Shown in pieces: positions 4,889-49,819 of a stretch of DNA of 64,000 bases; within the stretch, counting starts at the first letter, position 1, and each line of letters opens with the position of its first letter. The stretch is taken from positions 124,001 to 188,000 of the IMG/VR virus record IMGVR_UViG_3300050120_000230; one strand, 5' to 3'. Below the pieces are notes generated by a model. It was not told where the DNA came from. It was given only the letters and a program-made list of their open reading frames with translations, and searched no databases. The position numbers and the translations under genes are program-made.

Positions 4889-5317
4889 ATGGCATTTGAT
4901 TCTGAGGCCATCGACGGAACACGCGGTATGACCTTGCTGGGTCCTGACGGCGATCTTGAGATCGCGTGGGATTCCGAGAGCGAGGAAAAGGTCCGCGCGC
5001 TCATCGAAAAGAAAATGAGCGAAGGCGTGACCTTCTTCGTCATGCAGCCCATCGTCGGCGATGTGCTCCACATGCGTCGAAAAGTGACACGCGCCAGCCA
5101 ACTGGCCAAGGTCTCCAAGGTCACCATCAAGGACCCTGACATCGACGCGATGTTCTCGGCCGGTGAAATCGGTCTCTTCCGCGCAAATGGCGCCGAAGTG
5201 AACACCGGCGAAGCCGTTCGTGTTCGCGACGCCAAAGGCAAGCTCGATCACAGGGCGGCCAGCAAGGTGGCGGTGAAGCAACGCACCGTGGGCGTCCGAG
5301 CCCTCCAAGGGGGCTAA
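4889..5317 (+). CDS. Hypothetical protein
   Basis: 142 aa, GGAGG RBS. Confidence 0.8.
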   Translation: MAFDSEAIDGTRGMTLLGPDGDLEIAWDSESEEKVRALIEKKMSEGVTFFVMQPIVGDVLHMRRKVTRASQLAKVSKVTIKDPDIDAMFSAGEIGLFRANGAEVNTGEAVRVRDAKGKLDHRAASKVAVKQRTVGVRALQGG

Positions 5318-5320
5318 GCC

Positions 5321-6862
5321 GTGCCCGCCGCTGATGTGCAATACGTGCTCGATGGTTCGCTAGAAGCGGGCCACATCAGCGGTGACACGCATTTCTATCT
5401 CATGGAGATCGCCACCAACTCCAACGAGTTGATGGATGCCCATGAAGCCGAAGATCGTGATCGCCCGGCGGCCGAATCGCATTGGGCCAATCTCGCACGC
5501 ATGGGCCTCTACTTTGAGAGCCATTATGTGGATTGGCGGGCGAGTCATCCAGCCGAAGCTCGTATGGCCTCATTGCAGGGCCTCCGACACGTCCCCGAGA
5601 CGTTTCGCGAGTTCACCCAAGCCTGTTCACACAAAATGGCTGAACGGGGCCACAGGGCTCTTACACCCGCCGCGTTGGACATGCTGGACAAGGTCTTCGA
5701 GTTCAAGACGACGACGCGTGTCATGCGTCGAACTATGGCTCGGGCTGCTGCCGATTTCGCCGGGGCGTCACCAACTGAGCTAAGCGATGTTCGAACCCTG
5801 ATTGAAAATCGCTATGCAGACAATCGCCGCGCGCATGATGAGGCGATGCAGCGCCTTCAACAGAACATGCACACTCAGGTCAACAATTTCTGGGTGACCG
5901 TCACCAACGGCACCAATGCGACCACCAACAATTGGCGAGCGCATGTGAATGGCGTCTCACCGGAGAACTATCATCACAACGAGACCCAGTTCAAAAAGAC
6001 GCAGAAGATGTTGCGTGAACGGAAAGCTGACGAACGGCGAGTGCTGAAGCGCAGCATCAAGTTCTTCAGCAAGCTCGTTGGTTCTGACACTACGCGCGTG
6101 TTCATCGGCGGCGGCGGTATCCGCTTCGAGGGCAAACACGCGATCTACGAAATGAAGAAGATGTCGGGCATGATGAACTCGCATGGCGGGTTCCGAGCTT
6201 TGTCCGTCTATCACAAAGATCATCCCGATCTGATGCTCTGCAATCTGTGCATTGCCACGGACAAGGTTCCGTTGCTTGACCACGTCGCCAGCCTCATCAT
6301 GCACATCAAGTCGGGCAATGAGGAAGAAATCCTCAAGATCGGCAACGCTCGTGAAATTCACGAGACGGCCAGAGATTACGACTGGTTGGAGCCACATCTC
6401 CCCAAACCTTTCGACCGTGAAGGCCCACTGAACTGGGATCATCCTCGTCTGTTTGAACGCGATGAGTCACCCGGCTATCGTCGCAAACGGGAACGGATCG
6501 AAGCAGAAGCAATTCGGCTCCGGCCGATCATTGCCCGATACCTCTATGATGAAGTGCTCGCGGATTACATGCCACTCGTGCGCGCCGCAGGCTTGGCGAT
6601 CCGTAGTCCCGAATATCAATGGGCCACTGTGCAGACGGTCAACGCGACGGTCGGCACGAACGCGACGATGACAATCCCGTCGCCGTTCATGGGCCAAGCC
6701 GTTCCCACCCCGGTCGATCATCGTTTTTGCACACACGCCACGACGGTCGAACTTCTGAATCGTCCGTTGGTCGAACCGCTAGTTCCCGGTTTCGAAATGC
6801 AGATGGGGGCGGACTGGACTCCGCTTCCTGCCGCAGCCGAGACCGAATGGGTTGATGCCTAG
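5321..6862 (+). CDS. Hypothetical protein (513 aa)
   Basis: Long ORF, GTG start 3 nt after the previous stop; no family recognised. Confidence 0.8.
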   Translation: MPAADVQYVLDGSLEAGHISGDTHFYLMEIATNSNELMDAHEAEDRDRPAAESHWANLARMGLYFESHYVDWRASHPAEARMASLQGLRHVPETFREFTQACSHKMAERGHRALTPAALDMLDKVFEFKTTTRVMRRTMARAAADFAGASPTELSDVRTLIENRYADNRRAHDEAMQRLQQNMHTQVNNFWVTVTNGTNATTNNWRAHVNGVSPENYHHNETQFKKTQKMLRERKADERRVLKRSIKFFSKLVGSDTTRVFIGGGGIRFEGKHAIYEMKKMSGMMNSHGGFRALSVYHKDHPDLMLCNLCIATDKVPLLDHVASLIMHIKSGNEEEILKIGNAREIHETARDYDWLEPHLPKPFDREGPLNWDHPRLFERDESPGYRRKRERIEAEAIRLRPIIARYLYDEVLADYMPLVRAAGLAIRSPEYQWATVQTVNATVGTNATMTIPSPFMGQAVPTPVDHRFCTHATTVELLNRPLVEPLVPGFEMQMGADWTPLPAAAETEWVDA

Positions 6863-6959
6863 TAGTATTTGATGCTGCGGCGTCAATAGTATTTGACGAG
6901 CCTCTTTCCATAATCTAAATAGAGATTCACATCGCGCTCGCTCTGCGACTGCCTGAGAC

Positions 6960-7397
6960 GTGAACTTACCGACTGTTCCTCTGGGATTTGGACCGCTGTC
7001 CACCCCGGAACAGAAGGAGAAGAACATGTTTTTTGGTGATTTCACGAGCAAGCAAGATGTCTGTAAAGAGTTTAGTATTTCCGATTTTGAAGGCACTGTC
7101 GTCTTCGCGGCCTATGAGTATGAAGATTACAGCGGCTCCGCTGAGGTGATCTTCGTCCATGACGGGAAGTTCTTCATGGTCCAAGGGGGGCACTGCTCCT
7201 GCAACGGCCTTGAAGATCAGTGGGAACCTATCGAGATGCCGATTGAGGGGCTTCGGCGAATCATCGGCGACGGATGTGGAATGCTTTCCAAGTTTCGAGA
7301 GGGCCTCTCCGAGGCGCTCGAAATGTTGGTGGTGTTGAACCTTGAAGGCGCGTCCCCGGATGTTGTCTACACGGCTCTGAAACTCGCTTATGGATGA
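6960..7397 (+). CDS. Hypothetical phage protein
   Basis: GGHCSCNGLE.QWEP motif; start may be the ATG at 7026; followed by a hairpin and T-run. Confidence 0.75.
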   Translation: MNLPTVPLGFGPLSTPEQKEKNMFFGDFTSKQDVCKEFSISDFEGTVVFAAYEYEDYSGSAEVIFVHDGKFFMVQGGHCSCNGLEDQWEPIEMPIEGLRRIIGDGCGMLSKFREGLSEALEMLVVLNLEGASPDVVYTALKLAYG

Positions 7398-7437
7398 GAC
7401 AACGAGGCTCGCAGGGGAAACCCGGCGGGCCTTTTGT

Positions 7438-35688: not shown

Positions 35689-35692
35689 ATTG

Positions 35693-35782
35693 AGAATCAG
35701 GTGGGACTCGAACCCACGGGGACAAGCTTCGCTTGTTACGGGGGTAAAAACCCCGCCCTCTCGCCGCTGAGGTGACTGATCC
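35693..35782 (-). tRNA. Atypical tRNA-Lys(TTT) with long variable arm
   Basis: Loop TT-TTT-AC, V-arm ACAAGC-GAA-GCTTGT, U73, no CCA. Confidence 0.7.
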
Positions 35783-36634: not shown

Positions 36635-36678
36635 AGCAACAATTTATCTCTCTGAGATGTTGCGATGCAATATATTTG

Positions 36679-36762
36679 AGGGCGCGGTGGGACTCGAACC
36701 CACGGTGTGCTTACGCAAAAAGATTAAGAGTCTTCCCCCTTCGCCGCTCGGGACACGCGCCC
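36679..36762 (-). tRNA. Atypical tRNA-Lys(CTT) with long variable arm
   Basis: Loop CT-CTT-AA, V-arm TGC-GTAA-GCA, U73, no CCA. Confidence 0.75.
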
Positions 36763-36841: not shown

Positions 36842-36845
36842 ATTG

Positions 36846-36933
36846 TAGTCCTGCTTGGATTCGAACCAAGATCACGCCCCGATCTGGGACTACGGATTAT
36901 AAATCCGACGCTCTGCCGTTGAGCTACAGGACC
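36846..36933 (-). tRNA. tRNA-Ile(TAT) with long variable arm
   Basis: Loop TT-TAT-AA, V-arm GTCCC-AGATC-GGGGC. Confidence 0.8.
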
Positions 36934-40199: not shown

Positions 40200-41291
40200 A
40201 TGCCTCTTGTTAACAACGTCCGCACTACACCCGGCTCGGACGTAAAATTCTTCGCGAACACGACGCCCGATGCAAACTCGGTTGCTAAGGTCGATGCTGT
40301 CCCGACTGTTGCTGGACCTCCGGGTCCGCAAGGTGTTGGCATTCGTTCTATTACGATTTCCGACAGCGATGACCTTCTTTTCACTCTAACTGACAACACC
40401 ACTATTGACGCAGGTACTCTGCCGCCCGGTCCCACTGGTCCAACTGGACCTACTGGTGTCACTGGGCCGCCGGGTCCGATTGGTAATATCGGCCCACAGG
40501 GTATCAAGGGCGACAAAGGCGACACGGGTGCAACCGGCACGGCTGGTATTCCGGGTGTTCAAGGTCCGAAGGGCGACAAAGGCGACACTGGTCTGACGGG
40601 TTCCGTTGGCCCGGAAGGCGATCACGTCACCAACGCGGTCATCAACGGCTCGAATCACATCATCTTCACGCTGAGCGACAACAGCACTATCGACGCTGGT
40701 CTGTTGCCTCCCGGCCCGACCGGCAACGCAGGCCCCACGGGTCCGCAGGGTCCTCAAGGCGTGGACGTGGCGAACGCGACGATCAACGGTTCGAACCATC
40801 TCATCTTCACGCTGTCGAACTCGGCTGTTATCGATGCCGGTCCTTTGCCGCCCGGCCCCACGGGTGGCATTGGTCCGACTGGACCGGCTGGTCCCGCTGG
40901 TCCGCAAGGTAACGCTTCGACGGTGGCTGGCCCGGCCGGACCCGCAGGCCCGAACTTCGAAACGGTCGTCAATCTCAACACCGCCACCGGAACGGTCACG
41001 CTCGATCTTGGCTCGAACAGTTTCTACAATCTGACCCTCACCGGCAACGTCACCATCGCGTTCTCCAACACGGCGCTGACGACTCGTTCCTATACGGCCG
41101 TCGTTTCCATCAAACAGAATTCCAGCGGTGCGGGAACGTTCACGGTGACGTGGCCGGGAACCTGCAACACGCCGGGCAACGTCGTCTATTCGCAATCGAC
41201 GGGTCTGGGCGCCACTGACCTCTACACCGTGTTCACGATCAACGGCGGGGCGAGCTACTTCCTCAGCCAAATTGGGCAACTGTATTCCTAA
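40200..41291 (+). CDS. Collagen-like fibre protein
   Basis: GPxG triplets, repeated A.INGSNH.IFTLS..IDAG.LP module, late promoter at 40167. Confidence 0.88.
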   Translation: MPLVNNVRTTPGSDVKFFANTTPDANSVAKVDAVPTVAGPPGPQGVGIRSITISDSDDLLFTLTDNTTIDAGTLPPGPTGPTGPTGVTGPPGPIGNIGPQGIKGDKGDTGATGTAGIPGVQGPKGDKGDTGLTGSVGPEGDHVTNAVINGSNHIIFTLSDNSTIDAGLLPPGPTGNAGPTGPQGPQGVDVANATINGSNHLIFTLSNSAVIDAGPLPPGPTGGIGPTGPAGPAGPQGNASTVAGPAGPAGPNFETVVNLNTATGTVTLDLGSNSFYNLTLTGNVTIAFSNTALTTRSYTAVVSIKQNSSGAGTFTVTWPGTCNTPGNVVYSQSTGLGATDLYTVFTINGGASYFLSQIGQLYS

Positions 41292-46163: not shown

Positions 46164-46225
46164 ATTTACTTGACGAAACGCCCGTCCATGAGATCATATG
46201 TTGATCTTGCAAAGGGAGGGCATCC

Positions 46226-46501
46226 ATGACGACTGTGAAACTCTCCGAAGCGGAACACAACGCTCTCTCACTTCTGGTTCGCTCGGGCGGCTCGATCCTC
46301 ACGTCGGCCATTCCCGATAAGAACGAGAAGGACGTGTTTGACAACGTCGAGGCAGGCATCAAGGTCTACGTGAAACTTGAGACCCGTGGTCTGGTTGTCG
46401 TGACCGAGGAAGAGCCGTTCGAACTTGAAGACGGCACCGAGTTCCAGTTCACGAACGAAGTCTACATCACCGACGAAGGTCGGCACGCTATCAACCGCTA
46501 A
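46226..46501 (+). CDS. Hypothetical protein
   Basis: 91 aa, GGAGG RBS. Confidence 0.75.
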   Translation: MTTVKLSEAEHNALSLLVRSGGSILTSAIPDKNEKDVFDNVEAGIKVYVKLETRGLVVVTEEEPFELEDGTEFQFTNEVYITDEGRHAINR

Positions 46502-46564: not shown

Positions 46565-46639
46565 GCTTGGGTAGCTCAGGGGTAGAGCAGTGGGCTGAAA
46601 ATCCGCGTGTCGTTGGTTCGATTCCAACTCCAAGCACCA
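46565..46639 (+). tRNA. tRNA-Phe(GAA)
   Basis: Loop CT-GAA-AA, CCA end. Confidence 0.93.
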
Positions 46640-46809
46640 TTTTGGTTATTTTGACCGCAAGGTAGATCATACCGCCCGGCCAAAGCAAACCGCCCCACAA
46701 AACTTGGCACAGAAATGTGCACAAGTCGAAGTGGTTGGATTTGATCTCTATGACCTGAAGAAGGCCCCAGAAGATCAATCCAATCAAAGAGTAAACAATC
46801 CATGGGCTC

Positions 46810-47940
46810 ATGCCCATATTTAGAGAGGAACGGTCCCTTGGAGTTTCACGGCTAAGCCCAGAGCGCCTTAATCGGTATCTGGCACTGCAAGATTTGACCG
46901 ACGCATCGTCGGGCGAACACGCAATCAACCTCGTGCTGGACAAGCTGGTAACGGCAATTGAGCAATGGTCGGGCCTCAAGGCAGACATCGTTCGGTCCAC
47001 TCCTATCGTTTCCGTTCGGGACAACTACGACCGGCTCTACTATGAGCCGGACGCGGTCGCACGCTCTGCGCGCTATTCCCACTACGTTGACGATGAGCAC
47101 ATTCTTCGCACCCACACGACGGCGGCCATTCCCGGCCTGCTGACGGAGACCACGGCCGACCGGCTGATGGTTCTACCGGGTCTTGTCTATCGCCGCGATG
47201 TGATGGATCGGATGCATGTGGGAGAACCGCACCAAGTCGATCTCTGGGTCGCTAGGCGGTCAAGGCTCCGTCGTGATGATCTGTTGAAGATGATCGGCGC
47301 GGTTCTCAACGCGATCCTGCCCGGCTGCGAATACCGCTGCAACGAGACAATCCATCCATACACAGTAAATGGCTTGGAGGTCGAGGTTCGTGTGGACGAC
47401 CGGTGGATAGAGGTGCTCGAATGTGGGGAAATCCATCCGTGGCTTTTGAACGACAACGGCTTGCCTAGTCAGGAGTGGTCGGGCTTGGCGATGGGGCTGG
47501 GCCTAGACCGCCTTGTAATGCTCCTGAAGGGCATGGACGACATTCGGCTGCTTCGCAGCACGGATGCTCGTATTGCCCGCCAGATGGCTTCCCTGAGCCC
47601 CTACGAGGCTGTTTCGAACCAACCTATGACCAAGCGGGATATGTCGCTCACGGTGAGTGATCCTGACATCGAATTGATCGGAGATCGCATCCGGGTGGCG
47701 CTCGGTGATCGGGCTGACTGGTTGGAAGAGATCGTGGTCGTTTCGGCATCGAGTTGGGATGAAGTCCCGGCCGTGGCGAGGGAGCGTCTTGGGATGGCGC
47801 CTGAGCACACGAACCTGTTGCTGCGGCTCATCATGCGCTCACCGTCCGAGAGCATTCCGAAAGAGATCGCCAACGAAATCTACGACATAGTCTATGGCGA
47901 GCTTCACGAAGGATCGGCGGGGTATCAGCGTGTATCATAA
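46810..47940 (+). CDS. Single-chain PheRS-alpha-related class II ligase with C-terminal FDX-ACB-like domain
   Basis: LRTHTTA, motif 2 GLVYRRD..DR.H...PHQ.D, HPYT, W.EVLECG..HP, motif 3 GLAMGLGLDRL.ML..G..DIRLL, then RDMS domain. Confidence 0.88.
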   Translation: MPIFREERSLGVSRLSPERLNRYLALQDLTDASSGEHAINLVLDKLVTAIEQWSGLKADIVRSTPIVSVRDNYDRLYYEPDAVARSARYSHYVDDEHILRTHTTAAIPGLLTETTADRLMVLPGLVYRRDVMDRMHVGEPHQVDLWVARRSRLRRDDLLKMIGAVLNAILPGCEYRCNETIHPYTVNGLEVEVRVDDRWIEVLECGEIHPWLLNDNGLPSQEWSGLAMGLGLDRLVMLLKGMDDIRLLRSTDARIARQMASLSPYEAVSNQPMTKRDMSLTVSDPDIELIGDRIRVALGDRADWLEEIVVVSASSWDEVPAVARERLGMAPEHTNLLLRLIMRSPSESIPKEIANEIYDIVYGELHEGSAGYQRVS

Positions 47941-47958
47941 ACAAGACGGGAAGGCCCT

Positions 47959-48088
47959 TAATGCATCGTTTATGATGCACTACGGTCGATTTCACAGTCT
48001 AGTGCATCAGTTTTGATGCATTACGCAATTCGCCAAAAATGACGAGTTATGAACAAAAATAGCCCTAACTCGTCAAAATTGGCGAATT
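47959..48088. repeat. Two nested-palindrome inverted repeats
   Basis: 47959-48023 and 48027-48088; each arm is itself a quasi-palindrome; a third copy of the design lies at 46503-46559. Confidence 0.75.
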
Positions 48089-48090
48089 AT

Positions 48091-48165
48091 GTCGATGTAG
48101 CTTAGTGGCTAAAGCATCCGGTTGAAACCCGGAGATCGGCGGTTCGAACCCGCCCATCGGCACCA
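48091..48165 (+). tRNA. tRNA-Phe(GAA), variant
   Basis: Loop TT-GAA-AC, divergent body, CCA end. Confidence 0.9.
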
Positions 48166-48224
48166 TTATACTTGACCAATAGTCAGACTGCGGTAGATTG
48201 AACTTAAGCAGAAGGAGTCGACCC

Positions 48225-49369: not shown

Positions 49370-49819
49370 GTGCGGATGGAAGTTTGTCTCATTCGCCCCG
49401 ACCATTTCGACGCCATGGATGACATCCTGAATGGTAATGGGATGCCGCTCGCTCGTGCGTTCCCGCCGACCTATTTCGTGGCGCTGGATAGAGGGGAAGT
49501 CATCGGTGGTGGGGGATACGCCAAGATCAACCCAAGTACGGGCTGGCTGGCGTCTGTGGCCGTCGCCAAGCACCGCAAGCGCACCGGGGTGGGTTCGGCT
49601 GTCGTTGCCGCCAATCTACGCTATGCGGCCGAACGTGGAATGGGGTCGATGTGGCTGGAAACGTATTTCTGGAACAGCCGGTTCTATGAGAGCCTTGGTT
49701 TCGAAGGCATCGCACCCGCCCTCGTCCCGGCTCGCATCAAGGAGTGGAGAACCAAGAAGCACTGCCGCTTCATGGCGAACACTCTATTGCCAGCGCATTT
49801 TGAAATGAAGCGCCTCTGA
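49370..49819 (+). CDS. GNAT acetyltransferase
   Basis: WLASVAV...HRKRTGVGS acetyl-CoA motif; FYESLGF. Confidence 0.88.
   Translation: MRMEVCLIRPDHFDAMDDILNGNGMPLARAFPPTYFVALDRGEVIGGGGYAKINPSTGWLASVAVAKHRKRTGVGSAVVAANLRYAAERGMGSMWLETYFWNSRFYESLGFEGIAPALVPARIKEWRTKKHCRFMANTLLPAHFEMKRL

What the first reader, a model, noticed from the sequence alone, without database searches (positions are those of the whole stretch)
46565..48165. PheS-related single-chain ligase bracketed by two different tRNA-Phe(GAA) genes
Seen: tRNA-Phe (46565), then a 376-aa class II ligase with PheRS-alpha motifs 2 and 3 fused to an FDX-ACB-like C-terminal domain, then a divergent tRNA-Phe (48091), all on one strand. Established: bacterial PheRS is an alpha2beta2 enzyme, while mitochondrial PheRS is a monomeric alpha plus ACB chimera; this protein's N-terminus (LALQDLTD..GEHAINL) recalls a bacterial PheS-related family of unclear function. 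Inference: a self-contained or orthogonal Phe-charging pair, possibly lacking editing, or a tRNA-dependent ligase for another amino acid.
Basis: partly seen in the sequence, partly recalled or inferred. Interest (0 to 1): 0.75.

Follow-up and report, generated by a model that had tools for sequence, protein, structure and literature searches.

The report
Phage SrmL ligase between tRNA-Phe genes
A huge phage from peat carries, between two different phenylalanine tRNA genes, an intact one-chain relative of phenylalanyl-tRNA synthetase from a catalogued but untested family (NCBI's 'mystery ligase' SrmL), and this position is the first clue to which tRNA the family works on.

Summary
Two tRNA-Phe(GAA) genes (46565-46639 and 48091-48165, + strand) bracket a 376-aa ORF (46810-47940, +).

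The ORF is a full member of NCBIfam NF051887, "PheS-related mystery ligase SrmL" (443 bits, cut-off 300). It passes neither the bacterial PheS model nor the mitochondrial PheRS model. Its AlphaFold model (pLDDT 94.7) matches human mitochondrial PheRS over its whole length (TM 0.80): a class II core plus a C-terminal FDX-ACB domain, with no coiled coil and no editing subunit.

The window lies in a 415-kb viral record with 52 tRNAs and at least four other synthetase-like genes. These include a mini HisRS-like gene lying between two tRNA-His genes.

SrmL keeps the adenylation residues and most Phe-ring contacts. It differs from canonical PheRS at several pocket positions and at the residues that read G34.

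In bacteria SrmL always accompanies canonical PheS/PheT (10 of 10 genomes tested) and is never next to tRNA-Phe (0 of 60 loci).

Best reading (about 0.5): an editing-free auxiliary Phe-tRNA(Phe) ligase serving phage translation. The gene is a new member of a known, uncharacterised family. No activity was shown.

The parts
46170..46197 (+). Promoter-like site, TTGACG-N16-GATCAT. It is one of five copies of a recurrent motif, TTGAC-N16-18-AGATY.
   Evidence: Found by the promoter scan. The motif occurs 5 times in the window against 0.77 expected by chance. The sequence is conserved in L002. Function is inferred, not shown.
46226..46501 (+). 91-aa ORF of unknown function, the first gene of the putative unit
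   Evidence: ORF list. No Pfam family matches. It is conserved and syntenic in L002, where a 92-aa gene is called at 5280-5558.
46565..46639 (+). tRNA-Phe(GAA) number 1, of the cellular type, with CCA encoded
   Evidence: ARAGORN; Rfam 61.9 bits. It is identical in L002 and 84-87% identical to alphaproteobacterial tRNA-Phe. Reading the sequence by standard tRNA numbering, it carries U20, G44, U45, U59, U60, A73 and the G34-A38 purine run.
46810..47940 (+). SrmL, a 376-aa one-chain PheS-related class II ligase
   Evidence: NF051887 443 bits, cut-off 300. AlphaFold2 model pLDDT 94.7. Best PDB fold match is 3CMQ, TM 0.80. dN/dS = 0.13 against L002.
46909..47586 (+). Class II catalytic core, residues 34-259, with the motif 2 arginine (R128) and the motif 3 arginine (R234)
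   Evidence: Pfam PF01409. R128, H141, G206 and R234 are invariant in 52 diverse family members.
47602..47925 (+). Divergent FDX-ACB (anticodon-binding-type) domain, residues 265-372, with a family-specific insertion of about 10 residues (316-325) that opens a conserved Y316...R326-L-G328 motif
   Evidence: hhalign against PheT C-termini: 98.6% probability, E=6e-16. Pfam FDX-ACB scores E=0.072 here but 33.3 bits in a candidate-phyla-radiation (CPR) paralogue. The fold match covers this domain.
48091..48165 (+). tRNA-Phe(GAA) number 2, divergent, with CCA encoded
   Evidence: ARAGORN; Rfam 65.3 bits. Four compensatory pairs and no one-sided stem change against L002. No match in four alphaproteobacterial genomes. 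Reading the sequence, it has C20, A45, A59, C38 and a 4-nt variable loop.
48172..48199 (+). Next promoter-like site, TTGACC-N16-TAGATT, which closes the putative unit

Best explanation
The gene encodes an intact, selected SrmL-family enzyme. It is a one-chain class II ligase built like mitochondrial PheRS: a PheS-type catalytic core plus an FDX-ACB RNA-binding domain. It has no coiled-coil arm and no editing subunit.

Proposed mechanism:
- It activates phenylalanine with ATP and transfers it to tRNA-Phe(GAA).
- It does so without a beta subunit.
- In the phage it is probably transcribed as one unit with the two tRNA-Phe genes around it.
- It adds Phe-charging capacity for phage translation, including for a divergent phage tRNA-Phe that may be a poor substrate for the host's heterotetrameric enzyme.

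Shown: family membership, fold, conservation of catalytic residues, purifying selection, synteny.

Inferred: the amino acid, the tRNA substrate, action as a single chain, co-transcription, and the benefit to the phage.
For: Family and fold:
- NF051887 scores 443 bits, above its cut-off.
- The model has pLDDT 94.7 and matches 3CMQ over its full length, TM 0.80.

Catalytic residues:
- The motif 2 arginine R128 and motif 3 arginine R234 are invariant in 52 diverse members.
- Residues that hold the amino and carboxyl groups are kept: Q142, H/Q102 and T/S104. The equivalent of Glu217 is D144.

Phe-ring contacts, mapped from the M. tuberculosis PheRS structure (PMC8136816):
- Of the five contacts (F255, F257, T258, A305, R201), three are identical in SrmL: T185, A227 and R128.
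- F257 is replaced by Y184, and F255 by H182.
- Human cytosolic PheRS, a genuine PheRS, varies at the same positions: N410, Y412, N434 and F438.

RNA-binding domain:
- The FDX-ACB domain is homologous to that of PheT.
- It keeps D277 and S279, which correspond to Mtb D745 and S747. Those residues contact A35 to A37.

Synteny:
- The gene is flanked by the genome's only two tRNA-Phe genes. The same holds in L002, and a tRNA-Phe is close by in L010.
- In parallel, a mini HisRS-like gene lies between or beside two tRNA-His genes in three related phages.

Phage context:
- The phage record has no PheT and no other PheS.
- It does carry other synthetase genes, so synthetase genes are part of its repertoire.
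- Promoter-like motifs bracket the unit.
- dN/dS is 0.13.
Against: - No activity data exist. NCBI itself names the family a mystery, and four literature searches found nothing on it.
- All 10 cellular genomes tested that carry SrmL also carry a canonical PheS above its cut-off. The 5 tested for PheT have it as well. These include genomes of about 0.8 Mb. SrmL is therefore not the housekeeping PheRS and may do something different.
- None of 60 bacterial SrmL loci has a tRNA-Phe within 5 kb. There is no conserved neighbour gene.
- Three more distant phages have SrmL away from tRNA-Phe.
- SrmL differs from both bacterial and organellar PheRS at the sites that set specificity. FPF becomes H-P-Y, GCG becomes E-C-G, and HQVEG becomes HQxDxW.
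- The residues that read G34 (Mtb D778 and R830) have no conserved counterpart. They are replaced by an insertion of about 10 residues and a C-terminal H-E-G-x-x-G-Y motif.
- A true organellar-type PheRS found in other viral or phage-like contigs keeps all the canonical residues. It sits among tRNA-Leu and tRNA-Ser genes. Adjacency is therefore not a general rule.
- The phage record is 72% complete.
Confidence: 0.5

Rival explanations
1. SrmL is a tRNA-dependent ligase with altered specificity. It binds tRNA-Phe(GAA), or another RNA, through its remodelled FDX-ACB domain. It attaches an amino acid other than Phe, or it serves a non-ribosomal purpose such as a tRNA-dependent transfer reaction or an RNA modification. 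GluQRS is a precedent for the latter.
For: - Both specificity sites differ from bacterial and organellar PheRS. The pocket has H182, Y184, E204, D144 and W146. The residues that read G34 are replaced.
- A true organellar-type one-chain PheRS keeps the canonical residues.
- SrmL is always an extra copy beside PheS/PheT, even in genomes of about 0.8 Mb.
- The SrmL tree tracks phyla, which suggests a stable and distinct cellular role.
Against: - The floor of the ring pocket (T185, A227) and R128 are as in PheRS.
- The variable pocket positions are the same ones that vary in human cytosolic PheRS, which is Phe-specific.
- No conserved partner gene such as a transferase or carrier protein lies nearby.
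- The phage setting, among 52 tRNAs and other synthetase genes, points to translation.
Confidence: 0.2
2. SrmL does not act on tRNA-Phe at all. It would be a regulatory or protein-modifying paralogue, as HisZ and PoxA are for their synthetase families. On this view its position between tRNA-Phe genes is a historical accident of phage tRNA-array shuffling.
For: - The linkage occurs in only one phage lineage: the window, L002 and L010.
- None of 60 bacterial loci is linked to tRNA-Phe.
- Other one-chain PheRS-type genes sit among non-cognate tRNAs.
Against: - HisZ and PoxA have lost the anticodon-binding domain. SrmL keeps an FDX-ACB domain with conserved D277, S279 and a conserved Arg-rich insertion.
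- The adenylation residues are invariant.
- Two cognate pairings, Phe and His, occur in the same genomes. That is very unlikely by chance.
Confidence: 0.15
3. The gene is a decaying or non-functional passenger.
For: None beyond the absence of any functional data.
Against: - The frame is intact over 376 codons.
- dN/dS is 0.13 at dS 0.68 against L002.
- All family-invariant residues are present.
- The model is confident.
Confidence: 0.03

Closest known systems
NCBIfam NF051887, 'PheS-related mystery ligase SrmL'
   Same: Full-length match of 443 bits against a cut-off of 300. All family-invariant residues are present. The gene sits inside the SrmL clade (99* support). Within it, it joins an alphaproteobacteria-plus-huge-phage subclade (100* support).
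   Different: It is phage-borne and lies inside a tRNA array between two tRNA-Phe genes. The 60 bacterial loci examined are stand-alone genes with no tRNA-Phe nearby. The family has no assigned function.
Mitochondrial/organellar one-chain PheRS (FARS2; TIGR00469; PDB 3CMQ, 3TUP)
   Same: The domain plan is the same: a PheS-type core plus a C-terminal FDX-ACB domain, with no coiled coil and no editing domain. It is the best fold match, TM 0.80 over 413 columns, in the closed form. The core-to-domain junction is almost the same length, 34 against 35 residues, counted on the sequences.
   Different: - TIGR00469 scores 114 bits against a cut-off of 258.
- It forms a separate clade.
- The organellar type keeps FPF, GCG, FHQVEG, the D-x-F motif and the C-terminal Arg that read G34. 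SrmL does not.
Bacterial PheRS (PheS alpha, TIGR00468, with PheT beta, TIGR00472), an alpha2-beta2 enzyme
   Same: The class IIc catalytic core has motifs 2 and 3, and most Phe and ATP contacts are kept. The FDX-ACB domain is homologous to the C-terminal domain of PheT.
   Different: - TIGR00468 scores 108 bits against a cut-off of 237.
- No N-terminal coiled-coil family is detected. In the Mtb complex that arm contacts G19/U20 and the T-loop.
- There is no beta subunit or editing site in the phage record.
- In cells, SrmL coexists with PheS/PheT.
Synthetase genes of huge phages (general knowledge: huge phages are reported to carry many tRNAs and some aminoacyl-tRNA synthetases)
   Same: The setting is a 415-kb viral record with 52 tRNAs and several synthetase-like genes.
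   Different: This gene is not a copy of the host's housekeeping enzyme. It belongs to an uncharacterised paralogous family and is bracketed by cognate-looking tRNAs.

Membership tests
SrmL (NCBIfam NF051887) | Whole-protein HMM score at or above the curated cut-off of 300 bits, with a full-length match | tested here: met
   443.1 bits; residues 27-368 match profile positions 2-349 of 349. Confirmed on the genome.
SrmL (NCBIfam NF051887) | Family signature residues, derived here from 52 members: R128, H141-Q142-x-D144-x-W146, H182-P-Y184-T185, E204-C-G206, A227, R234, D277-x-S279, R326-L-G328, N335 | tested here: met
   All are present in the window protein.
SrmL (NCBIfam NF051887) | Placement inside the family clade in a tree that includes PheS and organellar PheRS | tested here: met
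   The SrmL clade has 23 rows and 99* support. The window sequence lies inside it.
Mitochondrial-type PheRS (TIGR00469) | HMM score at or above the cut-off of 258.35 bits | tested here: not met
   114 bits, in two stretches. A true member from another viral contig scores 385.7 bits.
Mitochondrial-type PheRS (TIGR00469) | One-chain architecture: catalytic core plus C-terminal FDX-ACB domain | tested here: met
   Foldseek against 3CMQ gives TM 0.80 over the full length. hhalign gives 98.6% for the C-terminal domain.
Mitochondrial-type PheRS (TIGR00469) | Canonical residues that read G34: Asp and Phe/Tyr after strand 2, and a C-terminal Arg (Mtb D778, F780, R830) | tested here: not met
   No conserved Asp or C-terminal Arg appears in either alignment register. 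An aromatic residue, Y316, may stand in for F780. An insertion of about 10 residues occupies the site.
Mitochondrial-type PheRS (TIGR00469) | Monomeric enzyme that forms Phe-tRNA(Phe) | not testable with these tools
   This needs biochemistry. The one complex-prediction job was not folded.
Bacterial PheS alpha subunit (TIGR00468) | HMM score at or above the cut-off of 237.45 bits | tested here: not met
   108.3 bits, covering residues 88-259 only.
Bacterial PheS alpha subunit (TIGR00468) | Works with a PheT beta subunit encoded in the same genome | tested here: not met
   No TIGR00472 match at E<=0.01 in the phage record. The caveat is that the record is 72% complete.
FDX-ACB domain (Pfam PF03147) | Pfam gathering score of 31.1 bits | tested here: inconclusive
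   14 bits, E=0.072, for residues 265-376. Homology is nevertheless supported by hhalign (98.6%), by the fold match and by a paralogue that scores 33.3 bits.

The most novel reading that the evidence does not exclude
SrmL and the divergent tRNA-Phe2 form a phage-encoded Phe-charging pair that largely bypasses the host enzyme.

- tRNA-Phe2 lacks U20, U59 and A38. Canonical alpha2-beta2 PheRS reads these directly or indirectly, partly through the alpha coiled coil.
- SrmL lacks that coiled coil and has a rebuilt anticodon-reading surface.
- The phage could therefore keep decoding UUY codons when host tRNA-Phe or host PheRS is depleted, inhibited or attacked.

If true, this would also assign a substrate to the whole SrmL 'mystery' family and provide a naturally compact candidate pair for orthogonal translation.
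Probability: 0.2. Interest if true: 0.8.

Novelty: new member of a known kind. Interest (0 to 1): 0.6.

Why it matters
- **An untested family.** SrmL is widespread. At least 567 hits were found among species-representative genomes. They come from Myxococcota, Actinomycetota, Gemmatimonadota, candidate-phyla-radiation (CPR) bacteria and some Alphaproteobacteria. The library search found 173 clusters at 50% identity with E<=1e-30. No function is assigned.
- **A specific hypothesis.** The phage arrangement points to tRNA-Phe(GAA) as the acceptor, and it provides two natural candidate substrates next to the gene.
- **If it is a PheRS.** It would be a prokaryotic and viral counterpart of the minimal mitochondrial enzyme. 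It would be relevant to translation fidelity without editing, to how phages take over translation, and to compact orthogonal synthetase/tRNA pairs.
- **If it is not.** It would be a new synthetase paralogue with a new activity.

Tried and rejected
- **Complex prediction.** SrmL with tRNA-Phe2 was submitted to complex prediction. The job was not folded and gives no evidence for or against binding.
- **Close relatives in viral contigs.** A single-protein scan found none. The alignment-based scan found five loci.
- **Conserved neighbours.** None was found in 80 bacterial loci. The apparent top clusters were overlapping alternative-frame ORFs. A set of neighbours shared by 6-7 loci in one cluster of closely related loci, mostly CPR-type genomes, consists of unrelated housekeeping-type genes: a class II D/K/N synthetase, dCTP deaminases, a methyltransferase and a decarboxylase.
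- **Literature.** No paper on SrmL or on a bacterial or phage one-chain PheRS turned up.
- **An idea I dropped.** I first thought the F-x-F ring sandwich was universal in PheRS, so that H-P-Y would imply another amino acid. PMC8136816 shows that human cytosolic PheRS has N and Y at those positions.
- **Sequencing runs.** Only the source peat metagenome holds this DNA. No RNA run was found.
- **Tree errors.** Three 'PheS' rows in the three-family tree (Sorangium, Microbacterium, Longimicrobium), and one in the earlier alignment (G010), were wrong-frame ORFs and should be ignored.
- **Integration scar.** I considered whether the two tRNA-Phe genes are an att-type duplication left by integration into a tRNA-Phe gene. 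I rejected this because the two genes share only 53 of 80 aligned positions and each is conserved separately.
- **Polarity.** The relationships among SrmL, organellar PheRS and PheS could not be rooted, because no outgroup sequence was available.
Full report
**1. What is there**

ARAGORN finds 31 tRNA genes in the window. They include tRNA-Phe(GAA) at 46565-46639 and 48091-48165 on the + strand. Rfam's tRNA model scores these 61.9 and 65.3 bits against a gathering score of 29. Between them lies one long ORF, 46810-47940 (+), 376 aa. Its N-terminal 26 residues are conserved in homologues, so the ATG at 46810 is a credible start.

The window is bases 124001-188000 of a 415,409-bp viral record that CheckV rates 72% complete. 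The DNA comes from a peat metagenome. The record carries 52 tRNA genes, and only these two are Phe. GC content is even across the region.

**2. What the protein is**

Sequence matches:
- Pfam sees only the PheS-type class II core, residues 34-259.
- NCBIfam NF051887, "PheS-related mystery ligase SrmL", scores 443 bits against a cut-off of 300, over residues 27-368.
- The mitochondrial model TIGR00469 scores 114 bits against 258. The bacterial PheS model TIGR00468 scores 108 bits against 237. Both fail.

Structure:
- An AlphaFold2 model built on 52 diverse homologues is very confident, with pLDDT 94.7 and pTM 0.91.
- Its best PDB match is human mitochondrial PheRS 3CMQ over the whole chain, TM 0.80 over 413 columns.
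- Bacterial PheS chains match only the core, TM about 0.55.

C-terminal domain (residues about 265-372):
- It misses Pfam's FDX-ACB threshold, E=0.072.
- It aligns to PheT C-terminal domains with 98.6% probability, E=6e-16.
- A CPR paralogue passes the Pfam threshold.

No N-terminal coiled-coil family is detected. The phage record has no PheT and no other PheS-type gene apart from a weak GlyRS-like hit.

**3. Active site**

Across 52 family members, the motif 2 arginine (R128) and the motif 3 arginine (R234) are invariant. H141, Q142, D144, W146, Y184, E204, G206 and A227 are invariant or nearly so.

I mapped these onto the M. tuberculosis PheRS structure paper (PMC8136816).

Ring contacts:

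| Mtb PheRS | SrmL |
|---|---|
| R201 | R128 |
| T258 | T185 |
| A305 | A227 |
| F257 | Y184 |
| F255 | H182 |

Contacts to the amino and carboxyl groups:
- Q215 corresponds to Q142.
- H175 corresponds to position 102, which is His or Gln in the family. E. coli PheRS has Gln here.
- S177 corresponds to position 104, Thr or Ser.
- E217 corresponds to D144.
- G282 corresponds to E204.

The same paper notes that human cytosolic PheRS has Asn, Tyr, Asn and Phe at the positions of F255, F257, G282 and V286. These positions therefore tolerate change in a genuine PheRS. The pocket is compatible with Phe. It is still a family-specific variant that differs from the canonical PheS of the very same genomes.

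**4. RNA-binding domain**

In Mtb PheRS the anticodon contacts are as follows:
- G34 is read by D778 and R830 and stacks on F780.
- D745 and S747 contact A35 to A37.

SrmL keeps D277 (43 of 52 members) and S279 (50 of 52). It has no conserved Asp or C-terminal Arg at the positions that read G34. In their place it has:
- an insertion of about 10 residues (316-325) that opens a conserved Y316-(D/E)-(D/E)-L-P-x-x-A-R-x-R326-L-G328 motif;
- a C-terminal H-E-G-x-x-G-Y motif.

The alignment register is uncertain by about two residues. Y316 may stand in for the stacking aromatic residue. Anticodon-loop binding is likely. GAA specificity cannot be read from the sequence.

**5. The two tRNAs**

tRNA-Phe1:
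- It is identical in the related phage L002.
- It is 84-87% identical to alphaproteobacterial tRNA-Phe.
- By my reading with standard numbering, it has U20, G44, U45, U59, U60, A73 and the G34-A38 purine run.

tRNA-Phe2:
- It has no match in four alphaproteobacterial genomes.
- It has C20, A45, A59, C38 and a 4-nt variable loop.
- Against its L002 orthologue, all eight stem substitutions form four compensatory pairs. It is therefore a maintained tRNA.

PMC8136816 reports that the alpha coiled coil of canonical PheRS contacts G19/U20 and the T-loop, and that the G34-A38 stack is read indirectly. SrmL lacks that coiled coil. A match between SrmL and tRNA-Phe2 is therefore conceivable, but it is inference only. 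Other isoacceptors in this genome are also present as divergent pairs without any synthetase gene beside them.

**6. Linkage**

The order tRNA-Phe, SrmL, tRNA-Phe is identical in L002, a 569,661-bp contig whose SrmL is 87% identical at the protein level. In the complete 578-kb phage holding L010, the order is tRNA-Phe, tRNA-Val, SrmL, with a second tRNA-Phe 1.7 kb upstream.

More distant phage SrmL genes, at 39-59% identity, have no tRNA-Phe within 3 kb. One of these phages has two tRNA-Phe-like sequences about 8 kb away.

A striking parallel exists in the same genome. A 195-aa HisRS-like core lies between its two tRNA-His genes. This gene is:
- flanked by two tRNA-His genes in the 578-kb phage;
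- next to two tRNA-His genes in a 517-kb phage;
- directly upstream of SrmL in a 508-kb record.

Two cognate pairings in one lineage are very unlikely by chance. They do share ancestry, so they count as few independent events.

Promoter-like motifs (TTGAC-N16-18-AGATY, 5 copies against 0.77 expected) sit at 46170 and 48172. They bracket a 91-aa ORF, tRNA-Phe1, SrmL and tRNA-Phe2. This suggests one transcription unit.

**7. The family in cells**

- An alignment-based scan of species-representative genomes gave at least 567 hits. They fall in Myxococcota, Actinomycetota, Gemmatimonadota, CPR bacteria and some Alphaproteobacteria.
- None of 60 loci has a tRNA-Phe within 5 kb, and no neighbour gene is conserved.
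- The family tree largely follows phyla. The window protein sits with two other huge-phage sequences as sister to Xanthobacteraceae sequences, in a clade of alphaproteobacteria and phages with 100* support. This, together with tRNA-Phe1, suggests an alphaproteobacterial host. That is an inference.
- All 10 SrmL-bearing genomes tested also have a canonical PheS above its cut-off. The 5 tested for PheT have it too.
- In a sample of 121 genomes, only 5 carry SrmL.

SrmL is thus an accessory enzyme, not the housekeeping PheRS.

**8. Relation to organellar PheRS**

The weakest viral hit, L011, turned out to be a true organellar-type PheRS. It scores 385.7 bits on TIGR00469 and E=9e-94 against human mitochondrial PheRS. 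It keeps FPF, GCG, D-x-F and the C-terminal Arg.

Using its homologues, I built a quick tree. It separates SrmL (99*), the organellar type (98*) and bacterial PheS (99*) into three clades that meet at an unresolved node. SrmL is therefore neither a mitochondrial-type PheRS nor a PheS. Polarity is unknown because the tree has no outgroup.

**9. Verdict**

The gene is a new, phage-borne member of a known but uncharacterised family.

The best-supported mechanism, at about 0.5, is an editing-free one-chain ligase that forms Phe-tRNA(Phe) and serves phage translation. The phage also encodes other synthetase-like genes.

The main rivals are an altered amino-acid or RNA specificity (0.2) and a role unrelated to tRNA-Phe (0.15). 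Nothing here shows activity.

Noticed in passing
Outside the window, same genome: G000:C1:378727-379314 (-), which is L092:1228-1815(-): A 195-aa mini HisRS-like class II core (Pfam tRNA-synt_His 1.5e-17; hisS model 139.6 bits, below its cut-off). Its matches cover only the catalytic-core models, and at 195 aa it is too short to hold an anticodon-binding or insertion domain. It lies between the genome's two tRNA-His(GTG) genes. Orthologues (77-79% identity) are flanked by or next to two tRNA-His genes in two complete huge phages (L109, L110). In a third record (L111) the gene sits directly upstream of SrmL.
   Followed up: partly
Outside the window: G000:C1:51218-51937 (+), which is L006:1309-2028: A 239-aa minimal class II core, most like GlyRS (NF003211, 9e-13). 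It lies about 550 bp upstream of tRNA-Arg(TCT) and tRNA-Arg(CCT).
   Followed up: partly
Outside the window: G000:C1:112734-113270 (-) and 348532-349854 (-): Two full-size synthetase-type genes. One is a 514-aa open frame matching tRNA-synt_2b (111.6 bits). The other is a 654-aa open frame matching tRNA-synt_2 of the D/K/N type (367.7 bits). Class I families were not searched.
   Followed up: no
L011:2872-3939 (+), from a 532,729-bp viral contig; also L125 and L126: A 355-aa protein that passes the mitochondrial PheRS equivalog model (TIGR00469, 385.7 bits). It is about 50% identical to organellar PheRS of protists, algae and plants. Relatives lie in phage-like contexts of densely packed small ORFs, on contigs up to 519 kb. 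In a quick unrooted tree the named eukaryote sequences form one subclade, with these metagenomic sequences branching outside it. Whether these viruses infect bacteria or eukaryotes, and which way the gene moved, is open.
   Followed up: partly
window 13852, 34721 (-), 46170, 48172, 54674 (-): A recurrent promoter-like motif, TTGAC(C/G)-N16-18-(T)AGAT(T/C). It occurs 5 times against 0.77 expected from shuffles. It may be a phage promoter class.
   Followed up: partly
window 35692-35782, 36678-36762, 36845-36933 (-): ARAGORN calls tRNA-Lys(TTT), tRNA-Lys(CTT) and tRNA-Ile(TAT) genes of 85-91 nt, which is unusually long for those identities. The two Lys genes lack an encoded CCA (the Ile gene's end was not examined). 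Their true identity is uncertain.
   Followed up: no
Outside the window: G000:C1:373385-373472 (+): A tRNA with a CTA anticodon, which would read the amber stop codon. ARAGORN labels it 'Pyl'. Stop-codon use in the genome was not examined.
   Followed up: no
window 49370-49819 (+): A GNAT acetyltransferase of 149 aa, about 1.2 kb downstream of tRNA-Phe2. It is syntenic in L002. Some GNAT toxins are known to acetylate charged tRNAs, but no such link was tested here.
   Followed up: no
L019:4971-6146 and 6285-7412 (+); L108: Some CPR genomes of about 0.8 Mb carry two SrmL-family genes, in tandem in L019, in addition to canonical PheS and PheT.
   Followed up: partly
window 40200-41291 (+): A 363-aa ORF with collagen triple-helix repeats, just upstream of the + strand tRNA array. 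It is syntenic in L002.
   Followed up: no
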